Part shown: piece after piece, positions 51,785 to 63,170 of the stretch
Position numbering within the stretch: the first letter of the stretch is position 1
How the letters are laid out: each line of letters opens with the position of its first letter
DNA from: Selaginella moellendorffii
Lineage: Eukaryota; Plantae; Lycopodiophyta
Assembly (NCBI RefSeq): GCF_000143415.4
Contig: NW_003314278.1
Location: forward strand, 1,748,362 to 1,812,361
DNA: 64,000 nt
Reading direction: 5' to 3'
Program-made: the position numbers and the translations under genes
The notes under the pieces: generated by a model
The model's input: the letters and a program-made list of their open reading frames with translations, nothing else
What the model was told of the DNA's origin: nothing
The model's database searches: none

Positions 51785-52315
51785 ATGGTCGTGCTGCATC
51801 CCCGCCCAGGGCTGATTCACCCCCCATTCGGGGGACGGCAGACGATGGACTGTTGCGACAGCGACGATGACTGCTGCGACATAGTGCCACACCACCACGG
51901 GCACCACGGGCACCACCACGGGCACCACCACCACCACCACAGCCACAGCCCCCGCGTCCACATCTCCTCGGCCCACTGCTCACCGCGCTCCTGCTCCCCG
52001 GTGCGCGTCCGCGTGGGCGACGATACCACGGTGCTCTACTCGGGTGGCAGCCACTGCCACCGCCCCTCCTTCTACCACCACCACCACCACGACTCCCTCA
52101 CGCTCCACATCGACGATTCGCCGCCGTGCACGCCCCGGATCTCCGTGCGCGCCCGGAGCTGCTCGCCCGAGAGGGTGACGCTGAGCATCACGCCGCGATC
52201 TTGCCCCTTTTGCCCCTCGTGGCAGCGCTACTGCCGCTGGTGCCCGATCTGCCGCTGGTGCCCGTACTGCCACCACGGCTGCCCTCGCTATTGCGGCTAT
52301 TGCCGCCTGTGGTGA
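51785..52315 (+). CDS. Orphan His/Cys/Arg-rich protein, 176 aa
   Basis: GC-rich intronless ORF with strong C-ending codon bias against AT-rich flanks; poly-His tracts, CC pairs, CxxC repeats. Confidence 0.65.
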   Translation: MVVLHPRPGLIHPPFGGRQTMDCCDSDDDCCDIVPHHHGHHGHHHGHHHHHHSHSPRVHISSAHCSPRSCSPVRVRVGDDTTVLYSGGSHCHRPSFYHHHHHDSLTLHIDDSPPCTPRISVRARSCSPERVTLSITPRSCPFCPSWQRYCRWCPICRWCPYCHHGCPRYCGYCRLW

Positions 52316-55652: not shown

Positions 55653-57075
55653 TTAGTTTGCTGTGAACAGCTTCTTGGCCAGAGTTTCGTGGAGGGCTTG
55701 TCGGGACAAGAGGTTTTCCATCTGCAAACAAGGAACCAATCAGCACAGGAACTTAAGATATCATATCCGGGGGCGTTGACTCACTCACCTTGGTGTTGTG
55801 GTGAACGGTCAAGCTGAGGACCGAGCTCACTTCGGGCTTCCAGTCGATGGAATCCAGCTCCAGACCGAGCTCCTGGAGGCAACTCAGCATCCTGACCAGG
55901 TCGTGATCCGGTCTCTTGACGTCGAAGCTGAGGTGAATTGCCGATCGCGCGGCGCGGGAGTCGTCATTATTGTCGAGCTCCTCCGTGAGCATGCTGGTGG
56001 GATTCGTTGCGGCTGGGGACAAGGACTCCACCTCTTGGTCGCCGGTGCCGCCGTTCAAGTTGGAGGTGAAGCTCGGGCTGCTCTGCTCTTGGAGCTCCGC
56101 GATCTGGCACCGGAGTTGCTTGATGTAGTCGATGGTGGCCTGGAGGACCGCGAGCTTGTTGGCCTGTCCAGTGCCACGTTCAGGGAGTGGAAATGAAAGT
56201 TGAAGCAAGTTTTCTTGTTTTAAAATGCTCATACCTTCTTCAAGGTCCCTTGTGGGATGAATTTCTTGAGCGTGGCCAGGTGCTCGGATTCCTTGGACCG
56301 CCGGGACCGCTCGGCCAGCATGTGGTTGTACGAGGCGGGAGTTTGCGCTGGAGCTCGCGGATTTGATTGGAATTGGATTAGGGGTTGGTGTTGGAGATCT
56401 TGAGCTTGAGCTACTTGAGAAGATGGCGCCTGTATTTCTAGTTGCTGCTGTTGGTGCTGCTGCTGGAGAGTTACATCTTCGGGGGCAGCCGAGGAGGAGG
56501 AAGCGCGAGATTGGAGCTGCTCCCTTTCGTGAACTTGCCGATAGAGATCCAGAATGGAGCACGCCATCGACTTCTTCCTGCAACCATGGCCATGAGTATG
56601 AGCGGTGCTTTCGATCCCAGGACTCCAGTATTGGAAGGCCTTGCCCGGATGGATTTCTACTTGTTCCACCGGTACCGCTTCCTCCTTGACCGCCATCACG
56701 GGCAGCGGCTGTTCGAAGTGCTGCTGCTGGAAACCCGCACCACGGCCCGTTTCCAGGGGAAAATCCACACGAGACAGCCCCTGAACCACGATGCTGTCGT
56801 GATCAAACAACTGAAACGCCTCGGTCCCGTCGAAGCTCCGGCTAAGTTGCTGAATGTGGGCTTGGAGCTCGTGATCGTCGTTGGGCTCCAGGAAGCCGCC
56901 GCCGCTGCTGGCCCCCGCGGAGCTCAGGCTGAAAGCAGACTCATGGCCCGTCGCTGCCCCTGGAAAGCTCCACGCCTCGGGATCGTACAAGGCCTGGGAT
57001 GGGAAGCACAGATTTGTGAGGAAGCAAAGGAGAACAAACTCTTGCTCCAAGGAGAGAACATACCTCCATCTCCAT
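55653..57075 (-). CDS. bHLH transcription factor with C-terminal ACT-like domain, 4 exons
   Basis: NHMLAERSRRSKESEHLATLKKFIP | ANKLAVLQATIDYIKQLR; LVRMLSCLQELGLEL. Confidence 0.88.
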
Positions 57076-57840
57076 GGCCTTTGCCGCTCCCTCGCTGCTG
57101 GTTACTTGTTCCAGGTCGGTCTCATCAGAGTTCTTAAGGGAAGAGATGGCAGAAAATCTGCGAACTAAGGCGAGATACTCTTGCTCCTCCACTTTGTTCG
57201 GCTGTTGCAGAGGATATCAATCTTTGGCCCCGATTTATTCAGCGGCTCCCCCGCATATTCCCCGAATACAACACGTGGGTTAAATGTGCACCTTCTCTGC
57301 TCGACACTGAGCTGTTAAACCGCCCTTTGACATCGCGGTTTCGGAGCGTAATCTAATCTAGCTTATGGCGAGGAAGGTGGTGAGGCAGCTTCCCAAGTGC
57401 CGCACGTTTTGGAAGCTTGCAAAGACCCCTCCTTTCCGCCTTTAGTCGAAGCCCACGCGAAGCCGCGGCGTGGAACGTCGAAGCTTTTGCGACATTGCCT
57501 GCTGCGCGGCCTGTCAAAACCACTTTCTTCACTAATCCCAAATACACGCAATCCTGTGTTCTGTGTGAGTTGTGTGTGATCAGGTCAGCATCTGGTTCTG
57601 GGCCACACCTACAAGGAACAATCAGCCACCATTTGTCAATTGATTGGAAGGGGGGCCACCCTAGCTCCTACAGTTGGGTCATTTTCCTGTTGAACACTTG
57701 GCTCGGCTTGCTTTTGGAATCACAGATCCTTTGGATTACGTAACTCTCACGTAATATATGGTGGTGGCTCTTGATTTTCAGGAACCATTGGGGATACAAA
57801 TTAGGCCATTTTCCTCCAGTGCTAACAAGTGTCTTGTTCC

Positions 57841-57876
<36 letters not shown>

Positions 57877-58392
57877 CTCTCTGTCTCTGTCTGTGGTTGT
57901 GGTTTATGCAAAGGACATTGTGTAATAAGTCGCAGCGAACATATGGTCTGTAACAAACTTAATGTTTCTGGAATACTAAATCAAACCCCTGGCCGTGATC
58001 TAGCGTGGATTAGAAAAGCATAGAATTGTATGAAACCGCGTTCAAGGCTTGTTCGGTGTTTATGTTGTGCCTGATCCAGTCCAGACGTATTCTACACGTA
58101 CTGCTAGTCCAATTCCAGTTTGCTACGGCATAAAGTTACGTAGTAACCGTAATAAAATGCGACCCCTTGCACGTGGCCTTTCATATTATCTCTAGCTCGA
58201 AACAAAGACAGTGTGAGGGAGTTCAAGTCAATTTTCTAGTTATATTTGCATATGATCCTATATGATGTGGAATAGCGTGGTGCAATAGACACATTAGTTC
58301 ATGGAATGTTCTAACATTACAAAAGTCATAGAACGTGTTCGCAATGCTCTGGGTATACATATCCATAAAGATCCCCGACTAGTGATCCTGCG

Positions 58393-58966
58393 ATGGTCCA
58401 TCGCAAGCTCGATCCCGTCGCCTGCTTGTCCCTCTTTCTCGCTCTTGGGCTTGCCACTCCAGGAATCAAGAAGGACACTACCTCCGCTGCCATCCTCCCG
58501 GCCGTCAACCGCCTCTTCCTCCGCATAAGTTGATGATTGATTCAATATGTCGAAGAGTTCTGTGAAACTGTTATTGCTGTGCAGTTGTCTACATCAATCC
58601 GGAACCCCCTGGTACATCTGCAGTGTAAGATTCTTTCTCTTTAGCGTTTCTGGTCTGATGATCGTGAGTTCACCGTGACCGTGACCGCAGTTTTCAGGTC
58701 GCCGCCAGGTGGTAAGGCTGAATGAACCAACAATCAATGTGTCTGCGTGTGTTTGGCATTTGGTTTCACAGGTCAAAGAGGCTTCGATTGCTCGCAATGC
58801 GTCGATTGCTGTTTCGCCTTCTATTGCATAATCCACGGTGAAGTTTGTGAGCATGTTAACGGTCTGTAATGCTCTTTTCATTGCTTGCATGGTTGATAAA
58901 ATCTGCTTCCTCTGTCCAGTGCTTGAAGAATGCCACCAGAACTGCCCCTTCGAATGTGTAATCTAA
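58393..58966 (+). CDS. Secreted cysteine-rich peptide gene, copy 1 (first donor and last acceptor altered; may be a pseudogene)
   Basis: Signal peptide; microexons 58585-58611 (27 nt) and 58691-58711 (21 nt); Cys exon 58772-58837 CSQCVDCCFAFYCIIH; tail CPVLEECHQNCPFECVI*. Confidence 0.6.
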
Positions 58967-59860
58967 CATTCTCGTAAAGACTCTGTAGAAAATCTTCCAT
59001 CGCAGCCAGCATGGTCTTAAAAATATCCAAAGATCCTCCCTTACATTGCACTCTCGTAAATCCCAGCAACATTGTCATGGCTCGAGAACGCTCAAGTCTC
59101 GTCTCTGGGATTTCCAAGAGACGACGAGAATTCCAGTCAGCGCGTGAAAGTCTGTCTCCCTCACCTTGCGATCTCGAAACATGCATAACTCCGTGCACTC
59201 CTCGCGATTGAAATATTAGGCAGATTCGTGCAGTTTTTCTTGCTTAACGTGTTGCAATTTATGGAGATGCTCCTGTTACAGCCGTTACTGTCAACTTGGC
59301 CGTCTAGATCCAAGTTCTTCCCATCATCTGTCAAAAAAAAGCTACTTCAAAATAGAATTAAAACATACCGCTAACTCGAAAGATCGGCAAGAAGACCGTG
59401 CACATCGGAAGAAAGCGGGCCTCGTCCAGTTCTACCAAAACAAACATCGAGGTTTGTGACGCTGCAACGTTACTTACATGTCCGATTAAAAACTCGTTTA
59501 AGAAACTGTATAAAACCGTGTTTAAGTCGATTGGCTGGTTGTTTGTGTATTGTCCAGGCCACGTATTCTCCATGTACTGCCAATCCATTTCCAGTTTGGC
59601 CACGGCATGAAGTTACGTAGTTCTACTGTAATGCAATGCGACCCATCCCTGCGCTCTATAACTCAAAAGACAGCCTGTGAGGGAGTTTAAACCACTTTTC
59701 TCTGCATAGATCCCATATAAGTAATATGAGGTGTGGAACAGCGTGTTGCAGCAGACATACATTAGTTCATGGAATGTTCTAACAGTACAAAGTCATAGAA
59801 GTGTGTCTGCTAGGCTCTGGGTATACATATAGAGAACAGTGCGACTGTAGTGATCCGGCA

Positions 59861-60451
59861 ATGGCCGCTTGGAAGCTTGATCTCTTCGCCTGCTTGTTCC
59901 TTTTTCTCGCTCTTGGGCTTGCCGCTCCAGATCCTACAGAGAATGGAGAACACCACCTCCGTCGCCATCCTTCAGACCGTCAAGCTCCTCCTCTTCTTCC
60001 TGGTAAGTTGCTCTAGATTCCAAGATGTCAGAGCTCCTGTCAAACTGGCGGTTGTTGTTGCAGATTTCGTCGGTTTCCCTGGTAAGTCTACAGTGTAAGA
60101 TTCTTTCTGAACTTCAGCGCTTTCTATCCGATGATCGTGAGTTTTGCCACCTCCGCAGTTTTCTGGTCGCCGCCAGGTGGTAAGGCTGAATGAGCCGACG
60201 ATCAATGTGTCTGTGTGTGTGTTTGGCATTTGGTTTCGCAGGTGATAGAGACTTTGACTGTCAGCAATGCGTCGACTGCTGCCTCGCGTTCACTTGCATA
60301 ATCCGCGGTGAACATTGCGAACAGTTTAACGGTCCGTAATCCTCTTTTCGTTGCTGCTTGATTTAATCTGCTTCCTCTTCGTCTTGCAGGCTTCCACTGT
60401 CCAGTGCTTGAAGCATGCAACCGGAACTGCCGCATGGAATGTTTACTCTAA
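59861..60451 (+). CDS. Secreted cysteine-rich peptide gene, copy 2 (intact, 5 exons, 102 aa)
   Basis: Exons 59861-60002, 60064-60081, 60159-60179, 60242-60307, 60390-60451; all introns GT-AG and phase 1; open frame to TAA. Confidence 0.8.
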
Positions 60452-61065
60452 CCAGCAAGAATACTGGCCATGAACTTAACCTTGATTTTCTCGTAATTTC
60501 TTTGAGCATGTATCCAATATCGCAAAACGCATGATTCATTCTTATGAATTTGTTTCCTCGCGAATCTCATCAACATTCTCATGGCTGGAGAACGCACAAT
60601 TCTCGTCACTCGAGCCAGCGACTGAAAGTCGGTCTCCCTCCTCTCCTTGCGATCTCGAAACAGGTGAACTCCGAGAGATCAAGACTGGCGACAAGGCCCT
60701 CTATCGAAAGAAAGGGGGCCTCGTTCAAACAAACAATGAGGTTTGTGATATATAGAAGGCATAAGAAAATGCAATGCTGCTTACCTTTAAGACTATCCAA
60801 GTAGTTGAACGTCAGGAAATCCTAAAAAAAGCCTGTGGCGAGAGCAAATGTGCCGACAGAATATACCGTAATACAATGCAACCCCTGCATGTGGCCTTGA
60901 ATATGTTCTCGAACTCAAAACAAAGACAGTGTGAAACCAATTTTCTAGTAATATCTCATATGCAGTGAGGAACAGCGTGTTGGACGTACAGTAGTTCATA
61001 GAAGGTTCTAACAGAATGCTCTGGGTATACATATAGAGAACTTTCCCGACTGTAGTGCTCCAGCA

Positions 61066-61598
61066 ATGACCGCTCACAAAATCCAGCTCATCGCATGCTT
61101 GTTCCTCTTTCTCGCTCTTGGGCTTGCCACTCCCACGGAATGGAGGACACCACCTTCCTCTGCTTCCTGGTAAGTTGCTCTAGATAGTGAATCAAGTCGA
61201 AGTGTTCCAGTCAAACTGCCAGTTGTTGCTGCAGATCCCTTGGTAAGTCCAGTGGAAGATTCTTTCTGAGCTTCAGCGTTTCTGATCCGATGATGACCAC
61301 CGCAGTTTTCTGGTTGGAGCCTATCGGTAAGGCTAATGAGCCGACGATCAATGTGTCTGTATGTGTTTGGCATTTGGTTCCGCAGGTGGTAGAGTTTTCG
61401 ACTGTCAGCTATGCGTGGACTGCTGCCGCGACTTCACTTGCATAATCCGCGGTGAACATTGCGAACAGTTTAACGGTCCGTACTCCTCTTTTCGTTGCTG
61501 CTTGATTCAATCTGCTTCCTCTTCGTCTTGCAGGCTTTTACTGTCCAGTGCAGCTTGAAGAATGCAACCGGAACTGCAACATGAAATGTTTAGTCTAA
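61066..61598 (+). CDS. Secreted cysteine-rich peptide gene, copy 3 (canonical exon1/2 join creates TGA; possible pseudogene)
   Basis: Exons 61066-61169, 61235-61242, 61306-61326, 61386-61451, 61534-61598; CQLCVDCCRDFTCIIRGFYCPVQLEECNRNCNMKCLV*. Confidence 0.6.
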
Positions 61599-62279
61599 CC
61601 AGCAAGCGAACTGGCTATACTTTACCTCGTAAATTCTTTGACTAGCTGTAGAAAATCTTCCATCGCTCGCAGCTGGTCTTAAATATCCAATATCGCAAAA
61701 CGCATGATTCGTTTCTATCAAATGTTTCGTTTTCTCGTGAACCCCAGCAGCATTGTCATGACTGAAGAACGCAGAAGTCTCGTCGTCTGGGATTTCGGAG
61801 AGACGTCGACATATCCGGACTTTCAGCCAGTCGTTCTCCCTCTGCCTTGTGATCTCGAAACATGCAGGTAGAACTCCGTGCACTCAGATTCGTGCAGTTT
61901 GCTTGCCATTTTTTCCTGTGCATACAGGGTGTTGGGGATGTCACTAACACGAAAGATCAAGACTGGCGAGACGGAAGGAAGGGGTTCTGCCAAAACAAAC
62001 AGTGAGGTTGGCGACATTAGAAACAGAAGCACAAGGTATAAGAAAATGCAATGCTGCTGACTTTTAAGACTGTCCAAGTGGAGAGTGATATAAAACATCA
62101 AGAAATACTCGTAAGAAACCTCTAGAGTCTGGGAAAAAAAACTTTTGGCGAGAAAAAGTCGAAATGTGTGGAGCAAGTTAAAGAATTAAAACCTTTGGTT
62201 TTAGCTTCAGAACTCTAAGTTTCTCGCTGGAGAAAAAAATATTCGGACTCCCTGTCAATCTGCTTTCCCGGAATATCAT

Positions 62280-63170
62280 CTACATTAGTCGCCCCACATA
62301 CAGACTCCTTGGGAAGCGCTCCTTGAGTTGAGGCCACTGGACGTAGAACAGATCCATGGCGTGAAGCCTGTATAGGATGAGGCCAGTGAGCGAGAGCTTC
62401 TGCACCCTGGCAATGCTTTCAATATACACCAGAGTCGCCCATTTCAGTCCCAAAACCTGCAAGCACGCAGTCCGTCCATCAAAATGTGATTTTTACTTCT
62501 TTTTCATTTTTCAACCTTCAACAAGAAAGCTGCGACGCAAACTGGCAGACAAGTCCCCGGTCCATTGCACAAAACCTGTGGACTTTTCTCAGCGACAAGG
62601 AGACAGCAAAAGAACTACGACTTGTCACTCACCACATCGGGTCTGATCCGGAAAACAACCCACAGAGCGTGGGCAATGGCCATCAAAGTCGTCACCACCG
62701 ACGTTAGATACGACTGCCCGACCTCGCGGCTCCTGTAAATCTGGAGGTAGTGCCGAGCACCTTGCAAACATCCATCCTAGCAAAGTATATCGATCCTCTC
62801 TCATCCTGCGTGATCCACAAATAGACCCACCAGAGTAGCAGCAGACGACGATTTCTCCTCCGCGGCCCGAGCTCTCGGCAAGCTCATGTTGTCACTCGCG
62901 GCAGCCAAGTATATCCTGGGGCTGTATCTCTCCGAACGAAGCATCTCCACGACGTTCAACATCTCAGCCGTGTGCCCGCCTAGGCAAAAACAGTAAGAAA
63001 GCTCTTCACAATGAGATTCTTCGTCGATTACCTGATCCAAGAACAACGAGGGTCTTGAAGGCCCGGCTGCCCGGCGCACGCGGCTTCCCGGTGAATGCGT
63101 AGACGACGAGCAATCTCCATAGCACAAGACCTACAGCTGCCCCGCAAAACAGAGGAAACCAATCCTCCAT
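62280..63170 (-). CDS. ALG14: UDP-GlcNAc transferase subunit ALG14, multi-exon
   Basis: TLVVLGS|GGHTAEML, YSPRIYLAAASDNMS, IYRSREVGQSY, CNGPGTC, YIESIARVQKLSLTG, FYVQWPQL. Confidence 0.93.

What the first reader, a model, noticed from the sequence alone, without database searches (positions are those of the whole stretch)
58393..61598. Hidden tandem family of microexon-built secreted cysteine-rich peptide genes
The ORF track misses these genes; I assembled them by hand. Copy 2 splices through four phase-1 GT-AG introns into MAAWKLDLFACLFLFLALGLAAPDPTENGEHHLRRHPSDRQAPPLLP-DFVGFP-VFWSPPG-GDRDFDCQQCVDCCLAFTCIIR-GFHCPVLEACNRNCRMECLL*. That is a signal peptide, a Pro-rich pro-region built from 18- and 21-nt microexons, and a C-x2-C-x2-CC-x4-C-x6-C-x5-C-x3-C-x3-C domain. 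All nine Cys codons are kept in all three copies while the residues between them vary (CSQCVDCCFAFYC / CQQCVDCCLAFTC / CQLCVDCCRDFTC), as expected for diversifying defence or signalling peptides. I do not recognise the spacing as defensin, thionin, RALF, LTP, snakin or EPFL; the CxxxC tail is only loosely alpha-hairpinin-like. Novelty is inference.
Basis: partly seen in the sequence, partly recalled or inferred. Interest (0 to 1): 0.85.

Follow-up and report, generated by a model that had tools for sequence, protein, structure and literature searches.

The report
Orphan Selaginella cysteine-rich peptide gene cluster
This is a small cluster of three tandem copies of a spikemoss-specific gene for a secreted cysteine-rich peptide, of which only the middle copy is clearly intact; two copies are already in GenBank as hypothetical proteins, so it is a real but fairly ordinary orphan gene family.

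Summary
The tandem triplet is real. The window is Selaginella moellendorffii scaffold GL377582.1. Copies 2 and 3 are already annotated as hypothetical proteins SELMODRAFT_412328 and 412329.

A spliced RNA contig confirms two junctions in copy 3. Exon 4 is 90 nt, which adds 8 residues and a tenth Cys. The domain is C-x2-C-x2-CC-x4-C-x6-C-x7-C-x5/6-C-x3-C-x3-C.

Only copy 2 is clean, and it is intact in both haplotypes with an identical Cys domain.
- Copy 1 has lost its first donor (GT to AT). A 20-nt deletion also removes the last acceptor and one Cys codon. In the other haplotype it is a deleted remnant.
- Copy 3 gets a TGA at the exon 1/2 junction with the homologous splice sites. In the other haplotype it has lost its ATG and parts of the Cys domain.

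Exons and introns diverge at the same rate between copies, and dN/dS is about 0.5. Diversifying selection is therefore not shown, although the Cys codons are retained more often than chance predicts.

An exhaustive HMMER search, Pfam, PDB sequences and Foldseek found no relatives.

Verdict: an orphan secreted cysteine-rich peptide gene with two decaying duplicates. Its function is unknown; defence or signalling is inferred. Another note of this scan (s1-334653) covers the same stretch.

The parts
59822..59831 (+). TATA-like box TATACATATA, about 39 nt upstream of the copy 2 ATG. The same motif lies before copy 1 (about 58354-58362) and copy 3 (61026-61035).
   Evidence: Sits in a block conserved in all three units (GCTCTGGGTATACATAT) in the alignment. 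Promoter function is inferred.
59861..60002 (+). Copy 2 exon 1 (142 nt): signal peptide and the start of the Pro-rich linker. Ends in phase 1 at a GTAAGT donor.
   Evidence: Same exon as in the public model P0001.
60064..60081 (+). Copy 2 exon 2, an 18-nt microexon (DFVGFP).
   Evidence: Used in the public models P0001 and P0003. No RNA read seen here.
60159..60179 (+). Copy 2 exon 3, a 21-nt microexon (VFWSPPG).
   Evidence: The public model skips it. Its use is inferred from copy 3, where the RNA contig joins the homologous exon end to exon 4.
60242..60331 (+). Copy 2 exon 4, revised to 90 nt with donor AACG|GTCCGT. Encodes the first six Cys of the domain.
   Evidence: By homology to the RNA-proven donor of copy 3. 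Identical to the public model P0001. Translation.
60390..60451 (+). Copy 2 exon 5 with stop codon. Encodes the last four Cys (C-x5-C-x3-C-x3-C).
58393..58966 (+). Copy 1, damaged. The first donor is AT at 58525 instead of GT. A 20-nt deletion removes the last acceptor and one Cys codon, leaving 9 Cys. An open frame needs a weak donor at 58529 and a new acceptor at 58919/58920.
   Evidence: Reduced to a remnant by a deletion of about 530 bp in the other haplotype. Not annotated on this strand.
61066..61598 (+). Copy 3 (SELMODRAFT_412329), transcribed and spliced. The Cys domain is intact with 10 Cys. Exon 1 is 104 nt and exon 2 is 8 nt, which gives a TGA at their junction.
   Evidence: The public model P0002 avoids the stop with another acceptor and a retained intron. 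The allele in the other haplotype is broken.
61386..61475 (+). Copy 3 exon 4 (90 nt), with both borders seen in RNA.
   Evidence: Run X1 contig (197 nt, depth 7.2). It has 13 loose letters equal to the end of exon 3 (61306-61326), then 61385-61474, then a GT..AG skip of 58 nt to 61533-61626.
61534..61598 (+). Copy 3 exon 5 with stop codon.
   Evidence: (acceptor seen in RNA).

Best explanation
The locus is a tandem triplication, found only in Selaginella moellendorffii so far, of a small five-exon gene for a secreted cysteine-rich peptide.

The precursor is about 110 aa. It has a cleavable N-terminal signal peptide, a short variable Pro-rich linker partly encoded by 18- and 21-nt phase-1 exons, and a C-terminal 50-residue domain. 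The domain carries ten Cys and probably forms five disulfides around two helices.

Only the middle copy (SELMODRAFT_412328) is an intact gene in both haplotypes. The two flanking copies are decaying duplicates, one of which is still transcribed and spliced.

Shown: the gene structure, two junctions in RNA, the damage to the flanking copies, and the absence of detectable relatives.

Inferred: secretion, disulfide bonding, and an extracellular role. Defence or antimicrobial action is the most likely role, and signalling is the next.
For: - Tandem units and their alignment.
- Copy 2 gives an open frame with GT-AG phase-1 introns.
- A spliced RNA contig on copy 3 proves the exon 3/4 and exon 4/5 junctions on the + strand.
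- Public models match: SELMODRAFT_412328, 412329 and 429846.
- The copy 2 allele in the second haplotype differs at 3 N-terminal residues only. Its Cys domain has one synonymous change.
- Copy 1 lesions. Its deletion in haplotype 2.
- Copy 3 lesions. Its haplotype 2 allele has ATG to GTG plus deletions of 11+1 nt and 36 nt in the Cys domain.
- Cys residues are never among the replacements. The chance of that is 0.004-0.08 per pair.
- N-terminal hydrophobic helix 5-20, and helices over the CxxCxxCC and CxxxC segments, in AlphaFold models.
Against: - No RNA read seen here covers copy 2. Only a few index words of it occur in RNA runs, and some of those could come from copy 3.
- The 5' half of every transcript, including both microexons as separate exons, is unverified.
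- Exons and introns diverge equally between copies, so selection is visible only at the Cys codons.
- The allele comparison of copy 2 is too small to prove constraint (Fisher p 0.27).
- Structure models are of low confidence (pLDDT 54 and 68).
- No signal-peptide predictor could be run.
- There is no functional evidence of any kind.
Confidence: 0.7

Rival explanations
1. This is an actively diversifying family. All three copies would be functional genes, and their pro-region microexons and inter-Cys residues would be under positive selection.
For: - The Cys scaffold is kept while 20-40% of the other residues differ.
- Copy 3 is transcribed and spliced.
- The three deletions in copy 3 exons 1-2 sum to 48 nt, a multiple of three.
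- Alternative acceptors can give open frames for copy 3, and a shifted donor can for copy 1.
Against: - dN/dS is 0.46-0.58 overall and 0.6-1.2 outside Cys codons. None of these is clearly above 1.
- Exon divergence equals intron divergence.
- Copy 1 has lost a canonical donor, an acceptor and a Cys codon.
- Each flanking copy is independently deleted or broken in the other haplotype.
Confidence: 0.15
2. The whole cluster, copy 2 included, is a young, possibly de novo, orphan with no biological role. It would be an expressed neutral sequence on its way to loss.
For: - No homolog anywhere in 1.84 billion representative proteins.
- Very low read support.
- Two of the three copies are decaying.
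- Exon and intron divergence are equal.
Against: - All Cys codons are retained across paralogs, beyond chance.
- Copy 2 is intact in both haplotypes with an unchanged domain, while its neighbours collected many indels over the same time.
- It has an orderly signal-peptide and Cys-domain architecture with a conserved TATA-like box.
Confidence: 0.12
3. The real gene lies on the minus strand. This is the 236-aa public model at window 58594-59588. The plus-strand peptide frames would then be incidental.
For: - A public gene call exists there.
- Minus-strand ORFs of 81-106 aa occur there.
- The few stranded reads of runs X4 and X5 over 61168-62031 have the same orientation as those of the minus-strand Alg14 gene.
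Against: - The minus-strand ORFs carry stops in the homologous parts of units 2 and 3.
- They have no Pfam domain.
- The GT..AG polarity of the spliced RNA contig is plus.
- The minus-strand reads are better explained as read-through from Alg14.
Confidence: 0.03

Closest known systems
Plant secreted cysteine-rich peptides in general (defensin-like, thionin, snakin/GASA, nsLTP, RALF and EPF classes; known to be under-predicted, Silverstein et al. 2007, cited in PMC7168108)
   Same: - Small precursor with a signal peptide, a variable linker or pro-region, and a C-terminal Cys-rich domain with an even number of Cys.
- Tandem duplication with birth and death of copies.
- Fast change outside the Cys scaffold.
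- Short exons that gene finders handle badly.
   Different: - No sequence or profile match to any of these families.
- The Cys spacing C-x2-C-x2-CC-x4-C-x6-C-x7-C-x5/6-C-x3-C-x3-C fits none of their signatures.
Alpha-hairpinins (plant helix-hairpin antimicrobial peptides with C-x3-C...C-x3-C)
   Same: - Two helices are predicted, each carrying closely spaced Cys.
- A C-x3-C-x3-C motif lies in and just after the second helix.
   Different: - The first helix carries C-x2-C-x2-CC, not C-x3-C.
- There are ten Cys rather than four.
- Foldseek finds no match to solved or predicted structures.
- The model is of low confidence.
Micro-exon genes of schistosomes (secreted proteins built mostly from symmetric microexons)
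   Same: Symmetric, same-phase exons of 18 and 21 nt encode a variable part of a secreted protein.
   Different: - Only 39 of 333 coding nt lie in microexons.
- No alternative splicing has been shown.
- The length differences between copies go together with pseudogene lesions.
- The organism is a plant.

Membership tests
Any Pfam family of plant cysteine-rich peptides (gamma-thionin/defensin, thionin, GASA/snakin, RALF, EPF, LTP/8CM, Stig1, prolamin-like/EC1, SCR) | Profile match to the family model. | tested here: not met
   hmmscan of the 110-aa copy 2 product against Pfam-A gave 0 families even at E<=10. The precomputed Pfam field is empty for P0001 and P0002.
Alpha-hairpinin | Two C-x3-C motifs, one on each helix of a helical hairpin, forming two disulfides. 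| tested here: not met
   Read directly from the sequence. Only the C-terminal segment has C-x3-C. The N-terminal helix has C-x2-C-x2-CC. No fold match was found.
nsLTP / 8-cysteine-motif proteins | C...C...CC...CXC...C...C pattern with eight Cys. | tested here: not met
   A CC pair is present, but there is no CXC and there are ten Cys. No Pfam LTP match.
Secreted protein (classical secretory pathway) | N-terminal signal peptide: a basic n-region, a hydrophobic core of 10-16 residues, and small residues at -3 and -1. | tested here: inconclusive
   The sequence has K5, a hydrophobic run at residues 6-21, and G-L-A before A-P. AlphaFold predicts a helix at 5-20. No signal-peptide predictor is available, and secretion has not been shown.
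Expressed, spliced gene | Spliced RNA across the predicted junctions. | tested here: met
   Met for copy 3 at junctions exon 3/4 and exon 4/5, the latter at a revised donor. Not tested for the copy 2 junctions or for exons 1-3 of any copy.
Schistosome-type micro-exon gene | Most of the coding sequence lies in symmetric microexons, with variation produced by alternative splicing. | tested here: not met
   Two microexons make up 39 of 333 nt. No alternative joints were seen.
Gene family under diversifying selection | dN/dS above 1, or exon divergence above intron divergence. | tested here: not met
   Nei-Gojobori dN/dS is 0.46-0.58 overall and 0.62-1.19 for non-Cys codons. Exon versus intron divergence is 10.7% vs 10.0% for copies 2/3 and 20.4% vs 20.2% for copies 1/2. 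The sequences are very short, so power is low.

The most novel reading that the evidence does not exclude
Copy 2 encodes the founding member of a structurally new, lycophyte-restricted class of ten-Cys secreted peptides. It would have a helix-rich, five-disulfide fold unrelated to known plant antimicrobial or signalling peptides, and a real extracellular activity. Its symmetric microexons would allow the linker to vary.
Probability: 0.3. Interest if true: 0.45.

Novelty: new member of a known kind. Interest (0 to 1): 0.25.

Why it matters
If the peptide is active, it would add a lycophyte-specific scaffold to the known plant cysteine-rich peptides. That is of modest interest for the evolution of plant innate immunity and for peptide engineering.

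The practical result here is a corrected gene model.

The locus is also a clear small example of birth and death in a tandem family. Presence/absence and null alleles differ between the two haplotypes of one individual.

Tried and rejected
- **Relatives.** I searched by word index, by an exhaustive HMMER profile of the Cys domain, in Pfam, in PDB sequences and by ESM Atlas features. The best Atlas score was 0.75, which is within noise and points only to generic small toxin-like peptides. Nothing turned up beyond the two local genes and one allele.
- **Structure.** The full-length AlphaFold model has pLDDT 54. The domain model has pLDDT 68. Foldseek against PDB and the AFDB clusters gave no usable match.
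- **Positive selection.** Not supported.
- **Transposon origin.** There is no protein match and no further copies in the window. The unit occurs only between the bHLH and Alg14 genes in both haplotypes. A genome-wide DNA search was not possible.
- **Minus-strand gene model.** Rejected because its frames are not conserved between units.
- **Raw RNA-seq runs X4 and X5.** Only about 10 reads each were laid, all in the orientation of the minus-strand neighbour, so they do not support the peptide genes.
- **Run X3.** This gave a colinear, unspliced, DNA-like contig and is uninformative.
- **Literature.** No paper names these loci.

Full report
**What is in the sequence.**
Between 58.3 and 61.7 kb there are three head-to-tail units. 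The gene parts start at 58393, 59861 and 61066, spaced 1468 and 1205 nt apart. The units align over promoter, exons, introns and 3' flank. A TATA-like TATACATATA lies about 39-40 nt before the ATG of copies 2 and 3. Copy 1 has a close variant (TATACATAT) at about the same distance.

A tblastn of the exon translations against the whole window finds only these three copies.

**Identity of the genome and existing annotation.**
A protein search with the copy 2 product returned two proteins. They are hypothetical protein SELMODRAFT_412328 (103 aa, 94% identity over the whole query) and SELMODRAFT_412329 (124 aa), both from Selaginella moellendorffii. Both are encoded on scaffold GL377582.1 of GCA_000143415.2, at the positions of copy 2 and copy 3.

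The genes are therefore hidden only from a plain ORF list. No paper in the library names them. Copy 1 has no model on the plus strand. A 236-aa minus-strand model covers 58594-59588 instead. Its ORFs carry stops in the homologous parts of units 2 and 3, so I treat it as spurious.

The neighbours are a bHLH gene on the left and an Alg14 gene and an LRR receptor kinase on the right, all on the minus strand.

**RNA evidence and the corrected model.**
Only one read-laying run was allowed. A 197-nt contig from RNA run X1 (depth 7.2) lies on copy 3.
- It starts with 13 loose letters that equal the 3' end of the 21-nt exon 3.
- It continues through 61385-61474.
- It then skips 58 nt with GT..AG ends to 61533-61626.

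This proves the exon 3/4 junction and the acceptor of the last intron.

Exon 4 is thus 90 nt. It adds eight residues (GEHCEQFN in copies 2 and 3) with a tenth Cys. Both public models use the same donor. All four introns stay in phase 1.

The corrected domain pattern is C-x2-C-x2-CC-x4-C-x6-C-x7-C-x5/6-C-x3-C-x3-C.

The public model of copy 2 includes the 18-nt exon but skips the 21-nt exon. The homologous exon end is used in copy 3 RNA, and the splice sites are conserved. I therefore think the true copy 2 product has 110 residues, but this is an inference.

Raw RNA-seq runs X4 and X5 gave about ten reads each. All had the same orientation as the reads on the 3' end of the minus-strand Alg14 gene. 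They most likely come from minus-strand read-through and say nothing about the peptide genes.

A second index search shows that a few RNA runs hold 4-10% of the sampled words of copy 2. This is weak evidence of expression, and I could not lay those runs.

**State of the three copies.**
*Copy 2* is clean in this haplotype.

*Copy 1* has several lesions.
- It has AT instead of GT at the homologous first donor (58525).
- A 20-nt deletion takes away the last acceptor and the first 11 nt of exon 5, including one Cys codon.
- A frame can be kept only with a weak donor four bases downstream and a new acceptor. That gives 9 Cys.

*Copy 3* has deletions of 8 and 30 nt in exon 1, and an exon 2 of 8 nt instead of 18. 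The sum restores the frame, but the exon 1/2 junction reads TGA. The public model escapes this by using another acceptor and reading through intron 2. Nothing seen here tests that.

**The second haplotype.**
The cluster of P0001 has a second member, SELMODRAFT_429846, on scaffold GL377686.1. That scaffold has the same flanking genes.
- The copy 2 allele differs by 3 replacements, all N-terminal, and 3 synonymous changes. The Cys domain protein is identical.
- Copy 1 is a remnant. The TATA-like box is gone, and about 530 bp from within the signal peptide to just past the stop are deleted.
- Copy 3 has GTG for ATG, deletions of 11 and 1 nt in exon 4, and a 36-nt deletion in exon 5. It still has the full-length exon 1 and the 18-nt exon 2.

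Each flanking copy has thus collected independent disabling changes in one or both haplotypes, while copy 2 has none. This is the pattern of one maintained gene with two decaying duplicates.

**Selection.**
Between paralogs, the Cys-domain exons and the introns differ by the same amount. The figures are 16/149 vs 24/239 sites for copies 2/3 and 29/142 vs 47/233 for copies 1/2.

Nei-Gojobori dN/dS is 0.46-0.58 for the domain and 0.62-1.19 when Cys codons are left out. No aligned Cys codon has been replaced. The only Cys lost is the one removed by copy 1's deletion. The chance that none of the observed replacements hits a Cys is 0.004-0.005 for the pairs with copy 1 and 0.08 for copies 2/3.

So the scaffold was under constraint during the divergence, and the rest evolved close to neutrally. 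Diversifying selection is not shown, though the sequences are too short to exclude it.

**What it is like.**
Every search for relatives was negative.
- Pfam gave no family at E<=10.
- A profile of the 50-residue domain, searched with HMMER against 1.84 billion representative proteins, found only the two local genes.
- PDB sequences gave nothing.
- ESM Atlas features scored 0.75 at best, which is within noise and points only to generic small secreted Cys-rich peptides.

AlphaFold models are weak (pLDDT 54 for the whole protein, 68 for the domain). They agree on an N-terminal hydrophobic helix (residues 5-20), a helix over the CxxCxxCC...C segment, and a shorter helix that starts the C-x3-C-x3-C segment. 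Foldseek found no match in the PDB or the AlphaFold DB clusters.

By direct reading, the Cys spacing fits none of the alpha-hairpinin, 8CM/LTP, thionin, snakin or defensin signatures.

**Most likely working.**
The product enters the secretory pathway through its signal peptide, with probable cleavage after GLA. It then folds into a compact ten-Cys, five-disulfide, largely helical domain carried on a short Pro-rich linker, and acts outside the cell.

By analogy with other plant peptides of this build, a defence (antimicrobial) role is the best guess, at about 0.4. A ligand role is next, at about 0.25. Both are inferences, and nothing here tests activity.

**Verdict.**
The genes are an orphan family already present in the public annotation as hypothetical proteins. 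Only one of the three copies is a sound gene. This is a new member of the well-known class of plant secreted cysteine-rich peptides, of modest interest.

The same stretch was also noted in this scan as 'symmetric phase-1 microexon cassettes' (s1-334653). My results suggest that most of that variability is decay.

Noticed in passing
window 58594-59588, minus strand: The public annotation has a 236-aa gene model with no Pfam domain, antisense to copy 1 and its 3' flank. Its ORFs carry stops in the homologous parts of units 2 and 3, so it looks like a spurious prediction.
   Followed up: partly
window 61168-62300: Sparse stranded RNA-seq reads (runs X4, X5) run antisense over copy 3. They have the same orientation as reads on the 3' end of the minus-strand Alg14 gene (62280-63170). 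This is probably transcriptional read-through from Alg14 across the peptide gene.
   Followed up: no
window 57000-62400 versus L003 3831-8654: The two haplotype scaffolds (GL377582.1 and GL377686.1) are only about 87-92% alike here once indels are counted. Many indels of 5-40 bp and one of about 530 bp lie between the bHLH and Alg14 genes. This is an unusually polymorphic intergenic stretch.
   Followed up: partly
window 57845-57895: A (CT)n microsatellite, followed by imperfect CTGT repeats, lies just upstream of the cluster.
   Followed up: no
window 55753-57333, minus strand: A bHLH transcription factor gene (Pfam HLH; 460 aa in the public model) is the left neighbour. An LRR receptor kinase of 1028 aa lies beyond Alg14 on the right.
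   Followed up: no
window 51785-52315: A 176-aa ORF rich in His and Cys, with a CRWCP-type repeat tail, was listed by the ORF scan. It shows no similarity to the peptide family studied here.
   Followed up: no
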